A DNA stretch of 64,000 nt from Tubulanus polymorphus (GCF_964204645.1 NC_134036.1:8484030-8548029), one strand, 5' to 3'; positions 48,410 through 64,000 are shown, counted from the first letter of the stretch. A program made the numbers and translations. The notes: generated by a model not told the origin, from the letters alone.

Positions 48410-48600
48410 CTTCCTTCGACAATCAGAAGCATTGTCGAAAAAAATTCCTTCGACAATGCGAAAATCGGAAGCATTGTCGAAAAAAATTCCTTCGACAATG
48501 CGAAAATTGGAAGCATTGTCGAAAAAATCTCCTTCGACAATCCGACAATCAGAAACCAAGCAATGTCGAGAAAATTTCCATCGACAATCCGACAATCCCA
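48410..48600. repeat. ~42-bp tandem repeat of hairpin units
   Basis: gcattgtcgaa-aaaaattcc-ttcgacaatgc repeated about 4 times. Confidence 0.85.
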
Positions 48601-50811: not shown

Positions 50812-51322
50812 CGGACCAGTTTATGAATTGAGCGTGGGCCATAGAGCGCTATATCCGCCTGTGATCTCGACTTTCAATTTATTACGTAAGCTATTCGTGA
50901 ACAAAATGCGGCCGGCGCACAATAGAAACTTCGCTCTATGTATTCTTTCATAACCGCCGACAAAGAGGACCGATATTTCGCAAATTGGATTCGGGAGGTT
51001 TAAACCTCCCAAGGTCAAATCACTAAAATTGTGACCTTCGTGGAAATTATCTAAAAAGCCGATGGTAATCAAATTTAGCAGAACCTTTTACCCAAACGTT
51101 CAATGGTTTGAAAATCTTTCAATGGCATTCCTAAGTATTTGATGAAAGTTGAGAAATCATAAGATATTCATATAACCATGGACTCTAAAACCTAAATCAT
51201 ATAAGAGTCCCCGATATAAACAAAAAAACTTCGCATAACGAAGAAGCAAAAATTCGAATCTGATTCATCTGTTTGGAATTGATTCTTATGAAATGAAAAC
51301 AAATGCGTGAGCACTACTCATT
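50812..51322 (+). repeat. Dispersed repeat, inverted copy of 29630-30110
   Basis: Reverse-complement match with one extra internal segment. Confidence 0.85.
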
Positions 51323-52045
51323 CATCACCCGATACACATCCCCTTCGTCGATACTTTATCAAAGAAGGGTAAACCTTCATTTGATAGTCTATCGCCTCGT
51401 GTTATAGTATACTATATTATGGTAACCCTTCTTAGATACTCATTGCCAGAAGGGCGCGCGCGTTGGTCGCAAATTTATATTTTGGTACTTAGTTCGGCAT
51501 GACTGTCGGTTGTTATCGACAGATCCATCTTCTCAAGGACGAAGCCTATTTGGGCCATACAAAACTCCTCCGGCTGGCATAACAATCGCGTTTTACAAGG
51601 ATTTTAGGCCTGAATTCGATCAAGACGACAATCTGCATCCAATCCCCGTGTACACTGGTAAGTAAGGTGGCCTAATGTCTATTTCATTTTCATTTTCAAC
51701 CTGACTTGTGACATTTCGTGAGAAGCATACCGGGTGGCCTACTCAATGTCTATTTATTAATGGATGAGACCTGTTTTTCTGGGATATTTTGCTTACTTTT
51801 TGGGGTAAGGTACATACCTCATTTATGTCTTAACAGAATGCCAAAAATCGCGGACAACAACTGAATATCCGATATATTTCCAGTTCTGTACCAATTAGAT
51901 GGATTGGCAAAAAGACTCCTTAAGTCCAATTGAATGAGAGAGAAAATCCTCCATTTTGTGAAATTTCTTGAATTTGAACATTGTCACCATGACTGACGAA
52001 CATATTTTCCACATAGGGTGAATTTTAATGACTTAAAAATGAAAC

Positions 52046-53317
52046 TTTTTTAGCCCACTTGGGACTTTAGTCCCAGCGGGCTATTGCGTTCACTTTTCGT
52101 CCGTCCATCTGTTCGTCTGTCCGTAGACGGAATCCAGTTATTTTGGGAAGTTTTGAAGACGCTTCAAGGTAATGTCTTGATATTTGGTTTATACATGTAT
52201 CTACCCTAGACACATCTTCAGCCCAAAAACTGGCCCTATCAGAATCAACATGGCCGACTGGCAGCCATTGTTGTTTGCCAAAATCAGCACTTTTTACACA
52301 TTTTCGAAGTTTACGAGGGAAATTTTGAAGACGCTTTGATCAATTACCTTGATCTTTCGAATATATTTGAATCTACCAAGGGCCCATCAGCATAAGAAAA
52401 ATTGGGTCGATCGGACTCAAGATGGCCGTCCTATGACCTTTTTAGTGCCCAAAAATGTCAACTTTGGCCAGAATTCTAGGTCCTGTAGCTTCCTACTGGT
52501 TTGCCATTTCTCATTGCAATTTGTGATGGGTATTCTTTGTAAAGGGATGTTTTATACCCGAGATAGGTATTTTTGATCCGCCAATTATGACGCAATTGGC
52601 AGCCATCTTGGTGTCATTAGTACTCATTCGTAGGTGGGAAAAAGTTTTTCGACATTATATTGGTACCTAAGCATATTTTGTTACAACAATGAATTAGAAA
52701 GTTTTAGAGTATAATGTGTTCTATGATTGGGGTGAGTTTCAAGTTCATTGTTTTTTGTATATGGCCACCAGGGGGCGTTGAATAATACAATATCTTAGTA
52801 TTTCTATATTATATTTGTACCAATACATATTTTGTTACCGCAATCAATTGCAAAGTTGTAGCTCATGACATCATCTATGATTGTGGTGAGTTTTAAGGAA
52901 ATTAGTAATTCTACATAGTCACCAGGGGGCGTTGAATAGTAGAATAACCTGGTATTTCCTTATTATATTGGTACCTAGGCATATTTTGTTACCATGATCA
53001 ATTGCGAAGTTGTAGTTCATGACATGTTCTATGAATATGGTGAGTTACAAGGTTATTGGGTTTTGAATATGGTCACCAGGGGGCGTTGAATAGTAGATTA
53101 ACTTAGTATTTCCATATTAAATTAGTAACGTGGCATTTTTTGTTATCACAATCAATTACAAAATCGTAGCTGCTGACATGTTTTATGATTGTATTGGGTT
53201 TCAAGGTCATTGGTTTTTGTATATGGTCACCAGAGGGCGTTGAATATTGAAATTGTTAGATTGTTGAGCATTTGAAACCACTTCCCAAGTGGGCATGGTG
53301 TCCCTGGACCCCTAGTT
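52046..53317 (+). mobile_element. Non-autonomous Helentron-type element, longer copy with an internal 154-bp tandem array
   Basis: Same termini as 36251-36809; cacca(g)ggggcgttgaata-type motif at 52761, 52915, 53069 and 53223. A 3'-end fragment is also at ~26693-26747. Confidence 0.85.
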
Positions 53318-53927
53318 TCGATCACAATAAAAACTTCTTGGGTACTGCCACAGAGACCGTCTGCAGGCTGCTCGGATCCAAATGGGGGCATGCTCATCGA
53401 TTGCGTCCCCTAACCCCTAGTTGATATTTGATTGCATTGTAAAGATTTTGTAATACGACTAAATAGAGTAGATGTGTTAAACTTAAAAATCGTCTTTTAT
53501 ACATGAGTATCACATTTGTAATTACATTTATATTCGATTTCATTTGGACAGAATCAACAAGATGAATGGACCCTTCGATATCAAGTTTCTCACATAACCT
53601 ATGTGCGATTCATACAATCAAATAACAGGCAAGTTGTAATAGCCCCCAACAAATTACCGGTACCTGAATTATGGCACTGAAGGAACTTGGGGATTTGCTC
53701 AGTATTCCATTTCGTTCAGTAATCCATTTGGGCTCTCTTCCAATCACAATATATGTATTGATTTCAGCATTTCTAATATTTTCTTTTCCAGAAAGACTGA
53801 TGTAGACTAAACTATAATTTAATTGTTAAATTCACCAAAGCAAGTGAAGTTTCCTCAACAGCTCTACTCCGATCTCAATGAATGAAAAATGTAAATGAAT
53901 TGGTTTCTTGTACTATAATAAATTCTT

Positions 53928-56900
53928 TTATTCTTTCAATTCAATTGGTTGATGTTTTTCTACAATACTTTGTATCTTTTTATCATACGAGATCACCATA
54001 TCCATAACGGATGTCAGGTTTTCAATCGGCTCCCATGTGTTGTGTTTTGAAGAGAAGTCCAACCACTTAATTTTGTAATATTGTTGACCTCCTTTCGATT
54101 GATGACCAACAATTTTTTCCACCAAGAATATGTCTGGAATTAAAGATTGATATCAAATATACTACCACAGGCTACATATTACAATTGAAATTTTGCGCTT
54201 TAAGATGCTGTTTCTGCATAAATACATACCATCATTTGGTTTCTTTCTGGATTTATTTGCTAAAATGAAAAAAAATCAATCATTTTTTTTTTAAACGAAA
54301 CTACAGTGAACACCTCCCTTAGTGAACTCCTCTATTTAGTGAACGCCTCCCTTAGAGAACACTTTTACCCGGGAACCAAATTTTCCCTACTCATTTTCAA
54401 TTAAACAGAACCACCATTTAGTGAACTTTACCAAATGAGTATTTATAGTGAACAGTGGTCCCATCCCAAAATAACCTTGTCCTCACTAGCGTGTTGTACC
54501 CAGGTTTCAACGTACCTGGGTTCAATGAAAACCCGCGTTCACGGTGAGTAGCGTCTACACTTAACACAGTTTCGGTAGAACAACATCTTTAGTGCAAGTT
54601 CAAGGTCAATTGTGGCGCCTGAACTCTGCATTGAACGCGGGTTCACTGTCTAGACTAGCAAAAAATGCAGAGTTTTACGTGACAGGGGGTTTCAATGTGG
54701 AGTGTTCTTCTTCAAGAAGGGTTTCTAAAACCTGGGTTTTGCGGAAAAATATGTGCTACCTCCAATTAGTGAACACCTCTCTATAGTGAACAATTTCTTA
54801 GGAAGCGAAGTGTTCACTAGAGAGGTTATGCTGTATTCGATTGGTATTAACTGAATTGAAGGCTGCATACCTGATTTCTCCTTTTTCTTTGTGACAACTT
54901 CGGTTTTTCTTTTTGTCATAGGTTCTGTTGAAAAAAAGAAAGGATAATTCAGCCTAGCTATTCAATAATATCTCATTTTATTTATTTTCTAAATATAAAG
55001 AACAATACGTACCTCTGATGATCTCTGCACTATCTGAATCTACAATGAGAAACAAGATAATTTACCCCAATATTACCATAGCTTGTAAGTTTATAAGACA
55101 AAAAGACTTAGTTGTACCTTCAGTGGCTTCTGGAAACAGAAGTTCTTCAGTTGGTGACGCTGCTTCTCCGTGGCTCATAGTATCAACTAATAAGAAATAA
55201 TTCTAATATTATCCATCAGTTTCATTTCCATTTCATTTCCATTAAAACATATCAATTGATTTTGAAATAACAGACCAATGCATTACTTGGAAAAAAGCAT
55301 ATTGTATTTGTGATATAAGGAAAAAAGAATTGATACCATGTTTCTTATTTCTGAGCTTAAAAATTGACGCAGGTGGCCATGTATCTACTCTGTATATTTA
55401 CTTTTTTTGAAACCATGATCAAGCTAACAATAACAGACCTGGCAGTTACAGAAATAAACTGATTAGAAAATGTATTGCCGAGGACAAACAAGGTATCAAT
55501 TTTTTACCTTATAAAACACAATAATGCTGATCTGGCTGCTTTGAAATATTTCTTTAAACGTGCATACCCTACCATTATTTATTTTCCTTTTCTTGATGCC
55601 AGTTTTGATTACTGAAAGAGAACAATTTTTTAATTGATTTTGTGCAATTATATTTTCATCAAAGACTGCATAGCTTAGTGTTAAAAACGTACCTGATTTC
55701 CCTGTTTTCTTTGTGAGGACTTCGGCTTTTCTTTTTGCCATATTAGGTTCTGTTGAAAAAAAGAAAGAATAATTCAGCCTAGCGATACAACAATATCTTT
55801 TTTGCTTAAACGTAAGAATAACATAAGAATACGTACCTCTGATGATCTCTGTAGCATCTGAATCTACAATGAGAAACAAGATAATTTACCCCAATATTAC
55901 CATAGCTTGTAAGTTTATAAGACAAAAAGACTTAGTTGTACCTTCAGTGGCTTCTGGAAACTGAAGTTCTTCAGTTGGTGACGCTGCTTCTTCGTGGCTC
56001 ATAGTATCAACTAATAAGAAATAATTCTAATGTTATCCTTCCATATTCCATTAAGACATATACCAGTACGAGTACATTGTATTTCAATTCATTAAGCCCA
56101 CACAAAGAAATACCCTAGTTCTTCAAGGTCAAATGCCACCCGCATCATAAAAAAAGTAAAAATCGAAATTAATTAAATTAAAATCGAAAATTCAAATGCG
56201 CTAACCCGCATTGGCAAACCATCAATCTGAATCGTCTTTTTTATCATAAAAATTAAATCCTGCTCGCCCGCACCGCTGTATTTGTTATTTACTTACTTAC
56301 CGCATCTCTTATATAAGTCTTTGGTTTCGAGCTTTTTATTTCAACTCTTTTTCAAAGGAGCTATGAAAATATAATTTGCTCACCAGCGTCACTTTCCAGA
56401 AAAAACCTGAGAAACTACGGTATTTCTTTGTGTGGCCTAATAATGACATTCAATATATCAACATCAAGATAAATGTTGATATATTATGTAATAGTGTGTC
56501 TAACTTAGTGTGTTAAATATCTATTACCGGTAAGTTGAAACAGTGTACCTTCGAAGTATATTTTATCTTCCTTTTTCAAAAGTGCTTTCAGCGAGTTTTT
56601 TGCATAAGATGATGGTCTTTTCAAAATTATTCCAGTTGGCAAATTAAATGCCCTGACTTGACCAGCATCAACCGCTTTGTAGCTGCATCTCGTCCCGGAG
56701 ATACCCTTTATTGCTGAAGCTATATAATGGCGCATATGAAATGATTACGATTGTCAAATGCTGAATTTTTCGACTATTTGAATGTATAATCAAATCAAGT
56801 AGCTAAAATATATGCTTACTGTATTTACGATTGAACATATCTGTGACTTTCGATCGCAGTACGTTGACATCTTCTAATTGATTGTCATCATCTGAATGTA

Positions 56901-58110
56901 GCAACAAACGTATAGAAACTGAGACTGCCTGAATTATCTTAGTTAATGATAGTGAAAGTGTGTATGTTTGAATTATCTTTACCTGGCTGATAAAGTGACT
57001 TCAGACTTTGCTGAACCTCTCTCTGTTTTTCAAACCACTTTGTTGGAATTGGTGATCCACATATAAACATTCTATTCCCATCCTTAGTAATAGCAATAGC
57101 AACAACATCCAACTTTTCTGTTGTCGAAGTAAATTTATTTACCTGAAGTATAATTATGTTATTTAGATGACTGCAAATAACATAAACGTTAATGGTTAAA
57201 TGAAACGGCCTACCTTTTTTTCTAGTTCATGCACCAGAAATTCAATGTTATTTTCTTTATTTTCTGGGCCGATAGGCTGGCTGTGGCTTGCAGCCCTCTG
57301 TGCGTATGAAGCCATTGCTTCCTCTGTTTGGTCATTCCAATTTCCCTGGCCTAAAATGATATACAAATTACACACACCTCACTTTAAACAGGCTCAGCAA
57401 CTACATAGAGGTTGACTAAAATCAACATGTATCTAGCTTACATTTTCCTTTTTTTTATCAGAGAGATAAACATCGTACGGTCTGCATGATCGAATGCGCT
57501 GCTTCTTACTCAGATTTTCATAGTTGTAAATCCCAGCTTTCTTTCGACATTGTACCTTGTGGTTCTCTATCCATTTCTTAAACAGAATAAACTAAAACTT
57601 TTAAAATACAGTTTATCAATTTATTATTTTAGTAAAAGTGCTTCATCACAAAGTCTGGAGAAAACACCGTAGGCCCTAGATCATAAGAAAAAGTTATATA
57701 GGCCTACCTTAACTGATTTCTCTGGCATGCCTGTAGCAACACTGGCTTCTCGAACCATTCCTTTGGTAAATTCATTTCCACAATGAGTCATCCCTTTCTC
57801 ATAATAGGACACCAAAGTAGACTGTCTGAATTCAAATTGAAACTAAAGCAGTTAACGACTGTTAAATGTAAGTAGCTTAAAAGATCTTTCATAGTCAAAC
57901 TCGCCAAAGTTCATCAGAGAGGTTGTCATAAGTTATCTCTGATCTTGGAACGACATTAGGCTAAGTCAACAACGTAATGATAGTGCATGTATCAGTTAAT
58001 TATAAGAACTAGGTCTGAATGGTTTGATAGTAGAGACCTGCCCAAGTGCATGCTTACCTTTCCTTGGTGTTTAATAATGGCCCATGGGTATTTTCAAATT
58101 CTTTGTCCAT
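53928..58110 (-). CDS. Gene C: 472-aa protein with homeodomain-like, HMG-box-like, GTF2I (TFII-I) repeat, microexon linker and C-terminal chromodomain
   Basis: 16 coding exons, all GT-AG and phase-consistent: 58110-58058, 57825-57708, 57576-57442, 57345-57214, 57142-56983, 56891-56820, 56719-56549, 56010-55942, 55863-55837, 55749-55693, 55611-55573, 55186-55118, 55039-55013, 54924-54871, 54259-54230, 54133-53928 (1419 nt). Probable UTR exon ends at 58796. Confidence 0.8.
54304..54833. mobile_element. Tc1/mariner-pogo-like MITE in a gene C intron
   Basis: TA|cagtgaacacctcccttagtgaac ... gttcactagagaggttatgctg|TA; repeated tagtgaac subterminal motifs. Confidence 0.7.
56096..56437. mobile_element. 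Harbinger-like MITE in a gene C intron
   Basis: TAA|gcccacacaaagaaatacc ... ggtatttctttgtgtggcc|TAA. Confidence 0.75.
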
Positions 58111-59649
58111 CTAAAAATAAAAAAGAATAATTGTTGACATCTTTTCATTCACTCAATGAAAAATGATGTGGCTGCTAGGCCTATAGTCTAGTCCTACTTC
58201 AAAATGGCCAATTGGTAGATCAAAAATGGTAGTGGATATTTGATCATTTCACCCTTTCGAAGCTAAACCCTAAACAAAGTGATGCATAATAAAGGTAGAT
58301 AAATTGATTACAGTGGCGTTGGAAGTGCAGCGACTGCAGCGACAATAATTTATTGATGACGTTTTTTTTTAATACCAAGTTTTTGAAGAAATTAAGTAAA
58401 TTCGCTGTGGCAATATTTAGAATCTGTCCAAAATCGGCATTTGGCTGCAGCAATAAAAAATTGCTTCCACCGCCCCTGGATTAGTTTGCTTTTTAGTAGG
58501 CCTACTGACTTAATAATTCAATACTCATTCCTCACTGAGTCTGAGCCTGAGGTACTAACAATGCGTCTATTCATCATTGTAGGAGTTAACAGACAATACA
58601 CAATGCCATACACCAAGCCCGCCACACTTATGGCAACAAGCCTTTTCAGTGAGAGTCAATGAGCAGATGAATAGGACCTGTTCTCTCTCGCTCCTCCAGA
58701 CCTAGGCTCTCGAATCCCCTATTTTTGCCCAGTAGTTACGAAATGAGTCGTTTAGGCTAGCTGTTTAAAGGCAACGTGACCAACTTAATTCTTACCTTTA
58801 AGATTTTTTTTTTGAACTGGAAGAAATAGGATCTGAGAGATCTTATGTCGTGAGTTGAACTCTTATCAGTCGCACGGCTGCTGCGGTGGGCAATGCCGGG
58901 TGGTACTGGTACCGGTAGTTTGGATGATGGATGAATCGCAATGTTGCACGCATTAAATGCATGATGGATCGAAACATTTTCACGAGTCAACTTCTGATTT
59001 GAAACTCGCTCTACCGGTACTTGAGTTATATTTCTTTTTACGATAATGTAAACCAAAATGATCCCGAGAAAAAAATTCAACCCAGTCAACAACCAACATT
59101 TAACAGTACACGAAGTTTGGCTGATAAGGATATTTCACTAGATTTCATCTACCTGCCACATTCCAAAACTAAAAAAATAAAATTCAGTTTCGTGTACATT
59201 TAAAAACAGTTTTTATTGAAATAACCTTTTGCAGAGAAAAATTATAATGAAATGCTGTGCAACTTAGATCATAATAATACAATTGCAATTAATCCTCGCA
59301 AAGTTTTTACAGGCCTAATTAATTCTATTATTTAAGATTTATGGATCATAAGTCTGTACGTAGTTATTACAGTCAATAGTACATATAATAAAAAACAACT
59401 TTTAAACAGCATCACCCTTCTAAAAATCATCATTAAGTTATTATAACAAATAAATTCTATCATTTGATATCTATATGGATAATAATCCTGTAGTTATTAC
59501 AGTTGATATGATAGTACACAGACACAATATAATAAAATACAACTTTTAAAAAGCATCAAACTTCAAAAAAGAAAACTAACTTTGAAAGTAACTACAGGCC
59601 ATGAGTATAACCGATTGACCCTGCTACTTATGATTAAAAGCCAAGATTT

Positions 59650-61343
59650 TCAAAACAAATGAGAAGAATAGCGACAAGTACGTGTCCAAATATGTGCTTT
59701 CTTCTCCTCGTGGAATATGCGAGTAAATTTCATAGGACACTCACATAGATAACAATTATGATTGCTGCCAACCCAACGGTATATCCAGATATCATGGTTC
59801 GGACAATGGCAATTTGTGGTGGTACTCGAACTACCTAATTTTTTGTCAATACTTTTTTTAACCGCTTCGTTATAGGCACATATCGTATCTAGTTTATGCA
59901 TTTGTCGAGCATGCTGAAGGAGATCTTTAAATTTTTCACCATACTTTTTGCAGTAAGGCAAAATACATCGATCAGCAATAACAACTTTTTCAGAAGTGTG
60001 ACGCTTTTTATGGTCAGTCAGGTTGCCTCTAGACATAAATCTTAATCCACAAATATTGCAAGCATATTGTCCTTTTGGCACATGTCTTTTAACATGAACG
60101 TTCAAATTGCTCTTATCGGTAAAGCTTTTACCGCATATCTCGCATGAAAATTTCAGTTCTTTGCAATGTATTCTTGAATGACGATTAAAATTTGATTTAT
60201 TGCCAAAAATTCTGCCGCACACCGAACATTCATATCCACTGTCTACTTTTTTACATAATACTGTAGCTGTATCGGGCGCAATAACTGATGACGAGTCCTG
60301 GTTCTTTTCGCTAACGTCACTTTTTAGAACGGAAACAACACGACGTCTATTACTTTTACGCCTGGACAAAGTTGTCGTAACATCAACACGTTTTACAGAT
60401 ACATTTTCTTCGATGTCCTGTTGCTGCTTGAGCTTTTTTAATTGGTCGACATGAATATTCCACTGTTCTTCGAAACTAATCGAATCATACTTCCATGCGA
60501 GGAAATGAAGTCCAATATTTAGGGAGGGCTTAAGTCCAATTGCTTTTTTTTCCATAAACAATGGTATAATCGATTTTGCATGTTCTTTAACTTCCTCCAT
60601 TGGCCATGGCCCAATTGGCAATGCTCCACCATACTTTAACCGCAGAGCTTCCACGCGTCTAATCGTATCAATTTCGCCAATAATTGGGCAGGAGGGAAGA
60701 AATTCTTGAAATTCATGAGTATAAAAGCTGAAAAGAAAGATATTCAATTAGAAGATAGTTTAGTACAGGTAAGATAAGAATTTTGGTTGATAAGAGGATT
60801 TATTGTCCATACTTACAAATAACCATAGCCATTTCCGTGTATTTCAACGACCAGGTCCCCACTTCCATAGGGGCATGTTGGTGGAATATCATGTAGTCCG
60901 CAGATCTGTTTTTGGGCCTGTGTATTTTCCGCTACATTTATCACACCCATACATCTGGGAGGAAACTTACGAACATACGCAAATCCCACTCGTATTCTCT
61001 CTGACTCTGTGCGAAGTAAATAAAGAGGTTTCTTACTTATCATTGACATCAGATCAGCTAATACCAAGTCATACAGCTATGCCTTGACAGTATATAAATT
61101 TAAACAATTACGGTATGTACCTTTTACAGCAGCTCCAGTAAGCTTGTTGGCCGGGTACTGGTTGTTGAGTCGGAGCCCATCTGTTTCAACGGGCGTACCG
61201 AGGATCGGGGTTTCACTGCCGACTTTCTTCTGCCGGCCTTGTTCTTTGTCACTATCGTCTTCGACTTCATCACTTACATTGAATGGTTCTATTCCACTAA
61301 TATCGCTACTTGCATCCAGATCCACGCCTAGACATTCAGCCAT
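59650..61343 (-). CDS. Gene D: 496-aa protein with acidic N-terminus, divergent PWWP-like segment, three canonical plus one atypical C2H2 fingers and a Cys/His-rich tail
   Basis: Exons 61343-61121, 61006-60817 and 60727-59650 are phase-consistent (1491 nt). Fingers: YECSVCGRIF...HSRIH, FSCEICGKSF...HVKRH, YACNICGLRF...HKKRH. The PWWP call is tentative. Confidence 0.82.
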
Positions 61344-61477
61344 CACGATGCAGATGCGTTCAGTTGATATAATTGATATAATTTATAGAAAGAAAAGAAT
61401 TGGATCGTATCGTCGCTTCGAGTATGATAAAAGAGAGCTGATGTTAGATGTTACTCTTGACGCACCCGTGTTGTGCA

Positions 61478-61489
61478 TGCGCATGCGCA
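61478..61489. promoter_or_regulatory. NRF1/EWG-type palindrome TGCGCATGCGCA about 135 bp upstream of the gene D ATG
   Basis: Exact consensus match between the ATG and the tandem array. Confidence 0.5.
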
Positions 61490-61623
61490 TTGCCTGGACC
61501 GTACGATTTTAGATTATAATCAAAATCATTGTATTTCACAAACGTCATCGCTTCAAACACTCGATGAAGTTTAAAACAAAATACGAAGCAAGTACGTCAC
61601 CACGATTATTATAGTAATTATAG

Positions 61624-64000
61624 TGGTCGTTCTTATTTGAACGACGATATCAGAAACGCGCAACTGCTAATATATAACCATATTCGCAATTCACCAGAAA
61701 CATACTGAGACAAGAACGACCAAGCAGGCAGAAAACATTAAACAATCATCAATATCCACATTTTTCGACTATATTTAGCGTGAAATAGAAGTTTCGATCA
61801 ATTTCTCATTGTTGGTCGTTCTTGTTTGAACGACGATATCAGAAACGCGCAACTGCTAATATATAACCACATTCGCAATTCACCAGAAACATACTGAGAC
61901 AAGAACGACCAAGCAGACAGAAAAAATTAAACAATCATCAATATCCACATTTTTCGACTATATTTAGCGTGAAATAGAAGTTTCGATCAATTTCTCATTG
62001 TTGGTCGTTCTTGTTTGAACGACGATATCAGAAACGCGCAACTGCTAATATATAACCATATTCGCAATTCACCAGAAACATACTGAGACAAGAACGACCA
62101 AGCAGGCAGAAAACATTAAACAATCATCAATATCCACATTTTTCGACTATATTTAGCGTGAAATAGAAGTTTCGATCAATTTCTCATTGTTGGTCGTTCT
62201 TGTTTGAACGACGATATCAGAAACGCGCAACTGCTAATATATAACCATATTCGCAATTCACCAGAAACATACTGAGACAAGAACGACCAAGCAGGCAGAA
62301 AACATTAAACAATCATCAATATCCACATTTTTCGACTATATTTAGCGTGAAATAGAAGTTTCGTTCAATTTCTCATTGTTGGTCGTTCTTGTTTGAACGA
62401 CGATATCAGAAACGCGCAACTGCTAATATATAACCATATTCGCAATTCACCAGAAACATACTGAGACAAGAACGACCAAGCAGGCAGAAAACATTAAACA
62501 ATCATCAATATCCACATTTTTCGACTATATTTAGCGTGAAATAGAAGTTTCGATCAATTTCTCATTGTTGGTCGTTCTTGTTTGAACGACGATATCAGAA
62601 ACGCGCAACTGCTAATATATAACCATATTCGCAATTCACCAGAAACATACTGAGACAAGAACGACCAAGCAGGCAGAAAACATTAAACAATCATCAATAT
62701 CCACATTTTTCGACTATATTTAGCGTGAAATAGAAGTTTCGATCAATTTCTCATTGTTGGTCGTTCTTGTTTGAACGACGATATCAGAAACGCGCAACTG
62801 CTAATATATAACCACATTCGCAATTCACCAGAAACATACTGAGACAAGAACGACCAAGCAGGCAGAAAACATTAAACAATCATCAATATCCACATTTTTC
62901 GACTATATTTAGCGTGAAATAGAAGTTTCGATCAATTTCTCATTGTTGGTCGTTCTTGTTTGAACGACGATATCAGAAACGCGCAACTGCTAATATATAA
63001 CCACATTCGCAATTCACCAGAAACATACTGAGACAAGAACGACCAAGCAGACAGAAAACATTAAACAATCATCAATATCCACATTTTTCGACTATATTTA
63101 GCGTGAAATAGAAGTTTCGATCAATTTCTCATTGTTGGTCGTTCTTGTTTGAACGACGATATCAGAAACGCGCAACTGCTAATATATAACCATATTCGCA
63201 ATTCACCAGAAACATACTGAGACAAGAACGACCAAGCAGGCAGAAAACATTAAACAATCATCAATATCCACATTTTTCGACTATATTTAGCGTGAAATAG
63301 AAGTTTCGATCAATTTCTCATTGTTGGTCGTTCTTGTTTGAACGACGATATCAGAAACGCGCAACTGCTAATATATAACCATATTCGCAATTCACCAGAA
63401 ACATACTGAGACAAGAACGACCAAGCAGGCAGAAAACATTAAACAATCATCAATATCCACATTTTTCGACTATATTTAGCGTGAAATAGAAGTTTCGATC
63501 AATTTCTCATTGTTGGTCGTTCTTGTTTGAACGACGATATCAGAAACGCGCAACTGCTAATATATAACCATATTCGCAATTCACCAGAAACATACTGAGA
63601 CAAGAACGACCAAGCAGGCAGAAAACATTAAACAATCATCAATATCCACATTTTTCGACTATATTTAGCGTGAAATAGAAGTTTCGATCAATTTCTCATT
63701 GTTGGTCGTTCTTGTTTGAACGACGATATCAGAAACGCGCAACTGCTAATATATAACCATATTCGCAATTCACCAGAAACATACTGAGACAAGAACGACC
63801 AAGCAGGCAGAAAACATTAAACAATCATCAATATCCACATTTTTCGACTATATTTAGCGTGAAATAGAAGTTTCGATCAATTTCTCATTGCTGGTCGTTC
63901 TTATTTGAACGACGATATCAGAAACGCGCAACTGCTAATATATAACCATATTCGCAATTCACCAGAAACATACTGAGACAAGAACGACCAAGCAGGCAGA
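61624..64000. repeat. Highly homogeneous 189-bp tandem array, at least 12.5 copies, running off the window end
   Basis: atttctcatt at 61801, 61990, 62179 and 62368 (period 189); only scattered substitutions. Confidence 0.98.

What the first reader, a model, noticed from the sequence alone, without database searches (positions are those of the whole stretch)
51340..64000. Compact two-gene chromatin-reader cassette between a hairpin pair and a 189-bp palindromic array: candidate arm of an undescribed large DNA transposon
Seen: two co-oriented, apparently intact genes (C and D) with mostly ~70-250-nt introns, whereas genes A and B have several multi-kb introns. Each pairs DNA-binding modules (homeodomain-like/HMG-like/I-repeat; C2H2) with a putative methyl-lysine reader (chromodomain; PWWP-like). 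A near-identical palindromic tandem array lies directly upstream, and a paired hairpin lies at 51341-51454. Known: several large eukaryotic DNA transposon groups (KDZ/Zisupton, CACTA, Helentrons) carry accessory chromatin proteins or internal tandem arrays. Inference: this is the targeting or anti-silencing module of a mobile element whose catalytic gene lies beyond the window. No transposase is visible here.
Basis: partly seen in the sequence, partly recalled or inferred. Interest (0 to 1): 0.85.

Follow-up and report, generated by a model that had tools for sequence, protein, structure and literature searches.

The report
Giant KDZ transposon with chromatin-reader genes
The stretch is the left half of a 25.8-kb, recently active cut-and-paste DNA transposon of the known KDZ superfamily in the ribbon worm Tubulanus polymorphus. 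Besides its transposase, the element carries two conserved genes of its own, one for an HP1-like chromodomain protein and one for a zinc-finger protein.

Summary
Window 51326-64000 is the left arm of a 25,832-bp DNA transposon that ends 13.2 kb past the window, at window-coordinate 77157.

- **Ends:** 139-bp terminal inverted repeats (94% alike), CA..TG termini and perfect 7-bp target-site duplications in all three copies I could read.
- **Empty site:** found in paralogues of the repeat the element landed in.
- **Transposase:** an intron-split KDZ gene (Pfam PF18758 plus a CxC2 cluster) lies just beyond the 189-bp array, on the same strand as genes C and D.
- **Copies:** six in the genome, four differing from this copy at 0.4-0.8% of non-coding sites, plus one diverged terminal-repeat pair.
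- **Confirmed:** HP1-like chromodomain, GTF2I-like repeat, three C2H2 fingers, the 189-bp array and the two hairpins, which sit inside the left terminal repeat.
- **Not confirmed:** PWWP-like, homeodomain-like and HMG-like modules.

Genes C and D occur only inside this element. They are intact in five copies and vary 2-4 times less than non-coding element DNA. Two decayed relics still show KDZ fragments followed by D-like sequence. A role in targeting or anti-silencing remains an inference, and no RNA data were available.

This is a new variant of a known kind, giant KDZ transposons with accessory genes.

The parts
51319..51325 (.). Left copy of the 7-bp target-site duplication (CATTCAT). The right copy lies at window-coordinates 77158-77164, outside the window.
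   Evidence: Paralogues of the host repeat (e.g. C6:15429552-15430213) are uninterrupted, and the two flank alignments overlap there by 7 bp.
51326..51464 (+). Left terminal inverted repeat, 139 bp, 94% identical to the reverse complement of the right end (window-coordinates 77019-77157). The terminus reads CACCCG...
   Evidence: There are 12 such ends for six copies plus one diverged pair.
51341..51369 (+). First 29-bp hairpin motif (CCCTTC..GATACT..AGAAGGG) in the terminal repeat. Candidate protein-binding site (inferred).
51426..51454 (+). Second copy of the 29-bp hairpin motif in the terminal repeat.
51746..51779 (.). 34 nt peculiar to this copy. In C2 a 1,286-nt non-coding segment was read here; in C4a, C4b, C8 and C6 the alignment coordinates imply a segment of about the same length.
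52047..53317 (.). Nested insertion of an unrelated 1.27-kb high-copy repeat with 154-bp internal tandem units. Absent from the oldest copy (C4a), present in the other five.
53931..57842 (-). Gene C. Exons of the RefSeq-type model lie at 57070-56984, 56892-56821, 56717-56550, 56011-55943, 55034-55014, 54925-54872, 54260-54231 and 54134-53931. Possible further 5' exons up to 57842 are unverified.
   Evidence: The gene occurs only in the six element copies.
53931..54134 (-). Chromodomain exon of gene C. It is HP1/MPP8/Rhino-like, and the aromatic-cage positions are kept as F, W, F.
56550..56892 (-). GTF2I-like repeat of gene C, split by an intron (exons 56892-56821 and 56717-56550).
55031..55856 (.). 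About 824-bp tandem duplication inside gene C that repeats three small exons. Present in C12, C4b, C8 and C6, absent in C2 and C4a.
59653..61343 (-). Gene D. Exons are about 61343-61122, 61008-60817 and 60730-59653. It encodes an orphan N-terminal domain, three C2H2 fingers and a C-terminal Cys/His cluster, 494-497 aa.
61624..64000 (.). 189-bp tandem array, running on to window-coordinate 65954. It lies between the 3' end of the transposase gene and the 5' end of gene D. It is found only inside copies of this element, with 3 to 23 units per copy.

Best explanation
Window 51326-64000 is the left arm of an autonomous, recently active, 25.8-kb cut-and-paste DNA transposon of the KDZ (Kyakuja-Dileera-Zisupton) superfamily in the nemertean Tubulanus polymorphus.

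Shown:
- 139-bp terminal inverted repeats and 7-bp target-site duplications.
- An empty site.
- Six copies.
- An intron-split KDZ/CxC transposase gene at window-coordinates about 74760-68340 on the minus strand.
- On that strand the order is transposase, 189-bp array, gene D, gene C.
- Genes C and D are integral genes of the element. They occur nowhere else in the genome, are intact in five copies and are as constrained as the transposase.
- D-like sequence follows KDZ fragments in two old relics.

Inferred mechanism:
- The transposase cuts and pastes the element.
- The sequence-specific DNA binders (the C2H2 fingers of D and the GTF2I repeat of C) recognise element DNA, most plausibly the repeated hairpin motifs in the terminal repeats or the 189-bp array.
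- The HP1-like chromodomain of C ties the complex to H3K9-methylated chromatin. That would either steer integration into silent DNA or modulate silencing of the element.

My odds: transposon identity and boundaries about 0.97; C and D functional for the element about 0.7; the specific chromatin-tethering role about 0.35.
For: - **Boundaries:** terminal repeat of 139 bp at 94% identity, termini CACCCG..CGGGTG.
- **Target-site duplications:** CATTCAT (C12), ATTTACT (C2) and GCGTAGC (C4a), all perfect and all different.
- **Empty site:** the left flank (window 51000-51325) and the right flank (beyond 77157) are adjacent, with a 7-bp overlap, in many paralogues of a host repeat, e.g. C6:15429552-15430213 and C7:10502887-10503549.
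- **Copies:** terminal-repeat pairs on C12, C8, C6, C4 (two), C2 and a diverged pair on C10. Interiors are collinear at 97-99.7% identity.
- **Transposase:** Pfam KDZ PF18758 on four exon pieces, two of them above the gathering score (40.5 and 31.0 bits), and CxC2 PF18803 at 36.1 bits.
- **Order of events:** C4a lacks both the nested 1.27-kb repeat and the 824-bp duplication, C2 has only the first, and the four youngest copies have both. The element therefore kept moving while it changed.
- **Genes C and D intact:** the 365-aa ORF of gene D is intact in 5 copies. The three gene C exons compared are free of new stops in all six copies. Neither gene has any other genomic paralogue.
- **Constraint:** variant-site density is 0.30% (C), 0.40% (D) and 0.55% (KDZ) against 1.16% in non-coding element DNA, each p<0.01.
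- **D family is old:** a 36%-identical intact homologue has the same intron position and is seen in marine metagenome contigs.
- **Relics:** KDZ fragments are followed by D-like sequence in the same order and strand at C11:10865801-10868074 and C6:12217234-12218288.
- **Chromodomain:** its best solved relatives are the H3K9me3 readers CBX5, MPP8 and Rhino, and the three cage positions stay aromatic.
- **Literature:** giant KDZ elements with nested insertions and accessory genes are known (PMC12477816; PMC12730594).
Against: - No RNA evidence. The only runs holding the stretch are DNA contigs, so transcription and splicing rest on RefSeq models and GT donors.
Joining exons was left out by rule, so 'autonomous' rests on stop-free exon pieces in four copies.
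- Lower variation in exons could partly reflect base composition or alignment quality in AT-rich non-coding DNA. Third codon positions are only mildly enriched among variants (21, 22, 31).
- Insertion sites give no clear support for heterochromatin targeting. One copy sits in a high-copy repeat, one in low-copy DNA and one in unique DNA next to a repeat.
- Gene C is not seen in the two relics.
Confidence: 0.85

Rival explanations
1. The element is a KDZ transposon, but genes C and D are passive cargo. They would be host genes or gene fragments picked up by the element (as in Pack-MULEs or cargo-carrying giant transposons) and play no part in its life cycle.
For: Giant KDZ and EnSpm elements often carry additional genes of unknown relevance (PMC12477816). 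Gene C is missing from the two old relics. There is no expression or functional data.
Against: No host parent copy of either gene exists in the genome. Both genes are intact in five copies and vary less than non-coding element DNA, at least as little as the transposase. D-like sequence accompanies KDZ fragments in two diverged relics. An intact 36% homologue of D exists elsewhere.
Confidence: 0.2
2. C and D act mainly on expression rather than on integration. They would be element-encoded regulators that bind the 189-bp array just upstream of gene D and counteract or exploit host silencing, for instance by displacing HP1 or recruiting activators. In that case there would be no effect on target choice.
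For: The array starts about 280 bp upstream of the gene D start codon and is element-specific. TFII-I family repeats and C2H2 fingers are transcription-factor modules. Fungal KDZ elements carry TET/JBP enzymes thought to counter methylation-based silencing (PMC12730594).
Against: Nothing tested here separates this reading from the targeting reading. The number of array units varies from 3 to 23 between copies without evident consequence.
Confidence: 0.3
3. The repeated block is a segmental duplication of a host locus rather than a mobile element.
For: Copies are long (25-57 kb) and few (six). C8 and C6 are nearly identical to each other.
Against: The block has sharp ends at matching 139-bp inverted repeats, different perfect 7-bp duplications at three sites, unrelated flanks, an empty site in paralogous repeats and a KDZ transposase inside.
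Confidence: 0.01

Closest known systems
Kyakuja elements of the KDZ superfamily (fungal Kyakuja-1_LB and Kyakuja-2_LB; PMC12730594)
   Same: KDZ transposase domain, 7-bp target-site duplications, 5'-CA..TG-3' termini, large size, and carriage of an accessory gene that acts on chromatin or DNA marks.
   Different: The fungal Kyakuja families are reported to lack terminal inverted repeats, whereas this element has 139-bp ones. Their cargo is a TET/JBP dioxygenase, whereas here it is a chromodomain/GTF2I protein and a C2H2 protein. The host is an animal. The phylogenetic position of the transposase was not tested.
Zisupton and Dileera elements (fish, fungi, algae, nematodes; PMC12730594, PMC9297572, bioRxiv 10.1101/2022.05.23.493040)
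   Same: Multi-exon KDZ transposase, terminal inverted repeats, presence in many metazoan phyla, and giant active copies (31.7 kb in Chlamydomonas).
   Different: Zisupton and Dileera make 8-bp duplications, whereas this element makes 7-bp ones. No separate chromodomain or zinc-finger genes are reported for them in the papers I read.
Giant KDZ elements of the brown alga Ectocarpus (PMC12477816)
   Same: Length of 15-30 kb, nested insertions of unrelated transposons that are shared by several copies and so show continued transposition, and additional transcribed genes.
   Different: A different kingdom. The identity of those accessory genes is not the same, and no internal element-specific satellite is described there.
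Chromoviruses (Ty3/gypsy retrotransposons whose integrase carries a chromodomain; Gao et al. 2008, cited in PMC12477816)
   Same: A mobile element that carries an HP1-type chromodomain. In chromoviruses it directs integration to heterochromatin.
   Different: In chromoviruses the chromodomain is fused to the integrase of a retrotransposon. Here it sits in a separate protein of a DNA transposon together with a GTF2I-like DNA-binding repeat. The function here is untested.
PIF/Harbinger two-gene transposons (transposase plus Myb/SANT DNA-binding partner; mentioned in PMC12730594)
   Same: A DNA transposon that encodes a second, DNA-binding protein alongside the transposase.
   Different: Unrelated transposase superfamily and partner. 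For Harbinger the partner's requirement is established knowledge. Here it is only a hypothesis, supported by the KDZ-D linkage in relics.

Membership tests
KDZ (Kyakuja-Dileera-Zisupton) DNA transposon superfamily | KDZ transposase catalytic domain (Pfam PF18758) | tested here: met
   Four exon pieces match successive parts of the profile. Two are above the gathering score of 26.6 bits, at 40.5 and 31.0 bits.
KDZ (Kyakuja-Dileera-Zisupton) DNA transposon superfamily | N-terminal CxC cysteine cluster associated with KDZ transposases | tested here: met
   CxC2 PF18803 at 36.1 bits (cut-off 27) and CxC1 at 27.4 bits (cut-off 26.9), on L021:7958-8188(-).
KDZ (Kyakuja-Dileera-Zisupton) DNA transposon superfamily | Cut-and-paste element structure: defined termini, target-site duplication, multiple copies, empty site | tested here: met
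   139-bp terminal inverted repeats, 7-bp duplications in 3 of 3 readable copies, six copies, and an empty site in paralogous repeats.
Kyakuja subgroup | 7-bp target-site duplication and CA..TG termini | tested here: met
   criterion taken from PMC12730594.
Kyakuja subgroup | Transposase groups with Kyakuja in a phylogeny; no terminal inverted repeats in the described fungal families | tested here: inconclusive
   No phylogeny was made, because the joined transposase model was not built or searched. Terminal inverted repeats are present here, unlike the described families. Subgroup not assigned.
Zisupton / Dileera subgroups | 8-bp target-site duplication | tested here: not met
   7 bp in all three copies read.
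HP1-type chromodomain (methyl-lysine reader) | Chromo domain fold signature (Pfam PF00385) with the three aromatic cage positions | tested here: met
   E 4.8e-15 on the exon and 3.5e-14 on P0010. The alignment to CBX5 keeps F, W, F at the positions of Y, W, F. Binding was not tested.
GTF2I-like (TFII-I) repeat | Pfam PF02946 above the gathering score over most of the profile | tested here: met
   41.3 bits (cut-off 27), profile positions 1-73 of 75, on RefSeq model P0010. PDB relatives are GTF2IRD1 and TFII-I repeats, E about 1e-5.
PWWP domain (gene D) | PWWP profile match or a PWWP/Tudor-like barrel in a confident model | tested here: not met
   No Pfam PWWP hit at E up to 1 on P0001. The AlphaFold model had mean pLDDT 35 and could not be compared. 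No look-alike in the ESM Atlas.
Homeodomain / HMG box (gene C, 5' exons) | Profile or solved-structure sequence match | tested here: inconclusive
   No hit on single exons. The domains would be split by introns, and the joined model was not searched.

The most novel reading that the evidence does not exclude
This KDZ lineage would be a multi-component transposon. The zinc-finger/Cys-cluster protein D would be an obligatory partner of the transposase, kept with it since before the present family arose, much as PIF/Harbinger needs its Myb partner. Protein C would then be a later addition, an HP1-like reader joined to a TFII-I-type DNA-binding repeat, that tethers the transposition complex or the element's 189-bp array to H3K9-methylated chromatin. 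That would make it a DNA-transposon counterpart of chromovirus targeting.
Probability: 0.25. Interest if true: 0.65.

Novelty: new variant of a known kind. Interest (0 to 1): 0.5.

Why it matters
KDZ elements are among the largest eukaryotic DNA transposons. In the invertebrate case I read (Pristionchus pacificus, PMC9297572), terminal inverted repeats were found but no target-site duplication.

Here a whole element is delimited to the base, with repeats, duplications and an empty site, in a phylum (Nemertea) with few genomic studies. Four copies differ from this one at under 0.8% of non-coding sites, so it may still be active.

The cargo differs from the fungal TET/JBP case. It is a separate HP1-type chromodomain protein and a zinc-finger protein, both constrained like the transposase. 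If they work for the element, it would be a tractable example of a DNA transposon that reads host chromatin marks.

It also shows that three RefSeq 'uncharacterized protein' loci of this species (LOC141909803, LOC141907197, LOC141900353) are transposon genes. That matters for gene counts and orthology work.

Tried and rejected
- **Expression:** The look-up of sequencing runs returned only DNA-like contig sets of one study plus one doubtful RNA run without the stretch. Read laying showed contigs across the introns and no splice joints, so there is no transcript evidence either way.
- **Structure of gene D's N-terminal domain:** the single-sequence AlphaFold model was unusable, mean pLDDT 35. 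I ran no fold search on it. The ESM Atlas gave no look-alike. A region-restricted homologue search found only the protein itself.
- **Homologues of gene C:** the full-length search found only itself. The exon search found GTF2I repeats in Capitella, a crinoid and vertebrates, but no GTF2I + chromodomain relative.
- **5' exons of gene C:** comparison with the N-termini of those proteins gave nothing significant.
- **Context of the gene D homologue P0002:** the contigs are 4.8 kb or shorter and hold nothing else from the element.
- **RNA families:** Rfam found no known RNA in the element.
- **MITE-like derivatives:** the terminal repeat occurs only at the seven pairs.
- **Segmental duplication:** rejected on the target-site duplications and flanks.
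- **Not possible:**
  - The RefSeq gene calls around gene D, because records of this genome are withheld.
  - The Iyer et al. 2014 KDZ paper, which is not held.
- All exon searches were by reference, piece by piece.
Full report
**What is there.** The window is G000:C12:8484030-8548029 of a 268-Mb assembly. The 365-aa ORF at 59650-60747(-) is 99-100% identical to RefSeq proteins of Tubulanus polymorphus. The contig lengths recorded for those proteins (16,677,571, 23,044,209 and 31,900,244) are those of contigs C8, C6 and C2 of this genome. The organism is therefore this palaeonemertean.

**The observation.**
- Gene D (61343..59653, minus strand, three exons, introns of about 113 and 86 nt) encodes 494-497 aa with three C2H2 fingers.
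- Gene C (at least 57070..53931, minus strand, eight or more small exons with GT donors) encodes a GTF2I-like repeat. The single exon scores 25.9 bits, and the spliced RefSeq model P0010 from the C2 copy scores 41.3 bits against a cut-off of 27. It also encodes a C-terminal chromodomain (E about 1e-14).
- The chromodomain's nearest solved relatives are the H3K9me3 readers CBX5, MPP8 and Rhino, and the three cage positions stay aromatic.
- The 189-bp array (99% matches) starts at 61624 and runs past the window to coordinate 65954. Each unit holds a 13-14-bp inverted repeat.
- The 'hairpin pair' is two 29-bp CCCTTC..GAAGGG motifs at 51341-51369 and 51426-51454.
- I could not confirm a PWWP-like module in D.
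- I could not confirm the homeodomain-like and HMG-like modules proposed for the 5' exons of C. Those domains would be split by introns.

**It is a transposon, and its limits are exact.**
- A search of the whole genome with 51340-61623 found collinear copies at 97-99.7% identity on C2, C4 (two), C6 and C8.
- DNA fetched beyond the window (L021, L029) showed that the similarity continues through the array to window-coordinate 77157.
- The first 139 bp (51326-51464) are 94% identical to the reverse complement of the last 139 bp. The termini read CACCCG..CGGGTG.
- The element is flanked by CATTCAT on both sides in C12, ATTTACT in C2 and GCGTAGC in C4a.
- The C12 copy landed in another high-copy repeat. 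In many paralogues of that repeat the left and right flanks are contiguous and the two alignments overlap by exactly 7 bp, for example C6:15429552-15430213 and C7:10502887-10503549. That is an empty site.
- The terminal repeat occurs at exactly twelve places for six copies, plus one 86-89% pair 11.3 kb apart on C10.
- Copy lengths are 25.4-25.9 kb (C12, C8, C6, C4b), 41.0 kb (C2, with a large insertion) and 56.7 kb (C4a, decayed, with a 33-kb insertion in gene D).

**The catalytic gene.** An intron-split gene lies on the minus strand at window-coordinates about 74760-68340, just beyond the array.
- Its exon pieces match successive parts of Pfam KDZ PF18758 (40.5, 31.0, 20.7 and 15.6 bits). An N-terminal piece matches the KDZ-associated CxC2 cluster (36.1 bits).
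- The exon pieces carry no stops in C12, C4b, C8 and C6. C2 and C4a have stops or indels.
- A 7-bp duplication and CA..TG termini are the hallmarks reported for Kyakuja, whereas Zisupton and Dileera make 8 bp (PMC12730594). The described fungal Kyakuja families have no terminal inverted repeats, and I made no phylogeny, so I do not assign a subgroup.

**History.** C4a lacks the nested 1.27-kb repeat (52047-53317) and the 824-bp tandem duplication in gene C. C2 has the first only. C12, C4b, C8 and C6 have both. The element therefore went on transposing while it accumulated changes, the pattern described for giant KDZ elements of Ectocarpus (PMC12477816). Against C12, substitutions at non-coding sites are 0.44% (C4b), 0.64% (C8 and C6), 0.84% (C2) and 2.4% (C4a). 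The C12 copy alone has 34 nt where C2 has 1,286 nt, and the alignment coordinates of the other four copies imply the same.

**Are genes C and D part of the machine or baggage?**
- Both genes lie inside the terminal repeats in every copy.
- Neither has any other paralogue in the genome, so there is no host parent gene.
- The main ORF of D is intact in five copies.
- Variant-site density across the five younger copies (C12, C2, C4b, C8, C6; C4a left out) is 0.30% in C exons, 0.40% in D exons and 0.55% in KDZ exons. It is 1.16% in non-coding element DNA (each p<0.01). Pairwise comparisons agree.
- The D family is old. An intact homologue, 36% identical, with the same intron position and the same N-terminal and C-terminal motifs, occurs on short marine metagenome contigs.
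- Two decayed relics in this genome keep KDZ exon fragments directly followed by D-like sequence in the same order and strand: C11:10865801-10868074 and C6:12217234-12218288.
- Gene C is not seen in these relics.
- I read this as good evidence that D is a long-standing companion of this KDZ lineage, and fair evidence that C is a functional, possibly later, addition.
- Caveats: there are no RNA data, the codon-position signal is weak, and a composition effect on the variation contrast is possible.

**Mechanism.** Cut-and-paste transposition by the KDZ enzyme follows from the family and from the observed duplications and empty site. The role of C and D is inferred. The DNA-binding modules of D (C2H2 fingers) and C (GTF2I repeat) probably recognise repeated element DNA, either the two hairpin motifs in each terminal repeat or the element-specific 189-bp array. 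That array begins about 280 bp upstream of the gene D start. The chromodomain of C would link the complex to H3K9-methylated chromatin, for target choice as in chromoviruses or for control of the element's own silencing. The three readable insertion sites do not show a clear preference for repeats.

**Comparison and novelty.** Known already:
- Multi-exon KDZ transposases in many metazoans (PMC9297572).
- Giant KDZ elements with nested insertions and extra genes (PMC12477816).
- A 31.7-kb active Zisupton (bioRxiv 10.1101/2022.05.23.493040).
- KDZ elements carrying TET/JBP (PMC12730594).

A full-text search for KDZ together with chromodomain and transposase returned one paper, and there the chromodomains belong to Gypsy elements. 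The present element is therefore a new family and, through its cargo and internal satellite, a new variant of a known kind. Other notes report further KDZ families in this genome fused to deubiquitinase and PHD modules, which I did not test.

Noticed in passing
window 51000-51325 and beyond window-coordinate 77158 (L029:3158-3500): The repeat that the KDZ element landed in is itself a young high-copy family, with at least 35 copies at 95-100% identity. I did not classify it.
   Followed up: partly
window 52047-53317; second, inverted relative at window-coordinates about 66500-67825 (L021:2500-3825): A 1.27-kb repeat with 154-bp internal tandem units has more than 35 genomic copies at 92-97% identity. 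It is nested in five of the six KDZ copies, and a related copy lies inverted between the array and the transposase gene.
   Followed up: partly
window 51736-52000: This stretch resembles both arms of foldback repeats of about 550 bp elsewhere, e.g. C9:13871660-13872211 and C12:9079038-9079587. Their relation to the KDZ element is unclear.
   Followed up: no
G000:C10:5845514-5856832: A pair of inverted copies of the KDZ terminal repeat at 86-89% identity, 11.3 kb apart. KDZ exon and gene D searches gave no hit there. It may be a non-autonomous or sister element.
   Followed up: no
G000:C11:10865801-10868074 and G000:C6:12217234-12218288: Decayed relics in which KDZ exon fragments (25-71% aa identity) are directly followed by sequence like gene D (38-59%). 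They are internally deleted members of older related families.
   Followed up: partly
proteins P0011 (Capitella teleta ELT88798.1) and P0012 (Anneissia japonica XP_033122800.1): GTF2I-like repeats are not confined to vertebrates. An annelid protein has three repeats, and a crinoid protein has four repeats followed by a long C2H2 array.
   Followed up: partly
window 58300-58600: Contig depth in the public DNA runs jumps about tenfold here, which points to a short high-copy repeat between genes C and D.
   Followed up: no
window 48417-48554: A 42-bp tandem repeat (3.3 units, 90% matches) lies outside the element. Not examined.
   Followed up: no
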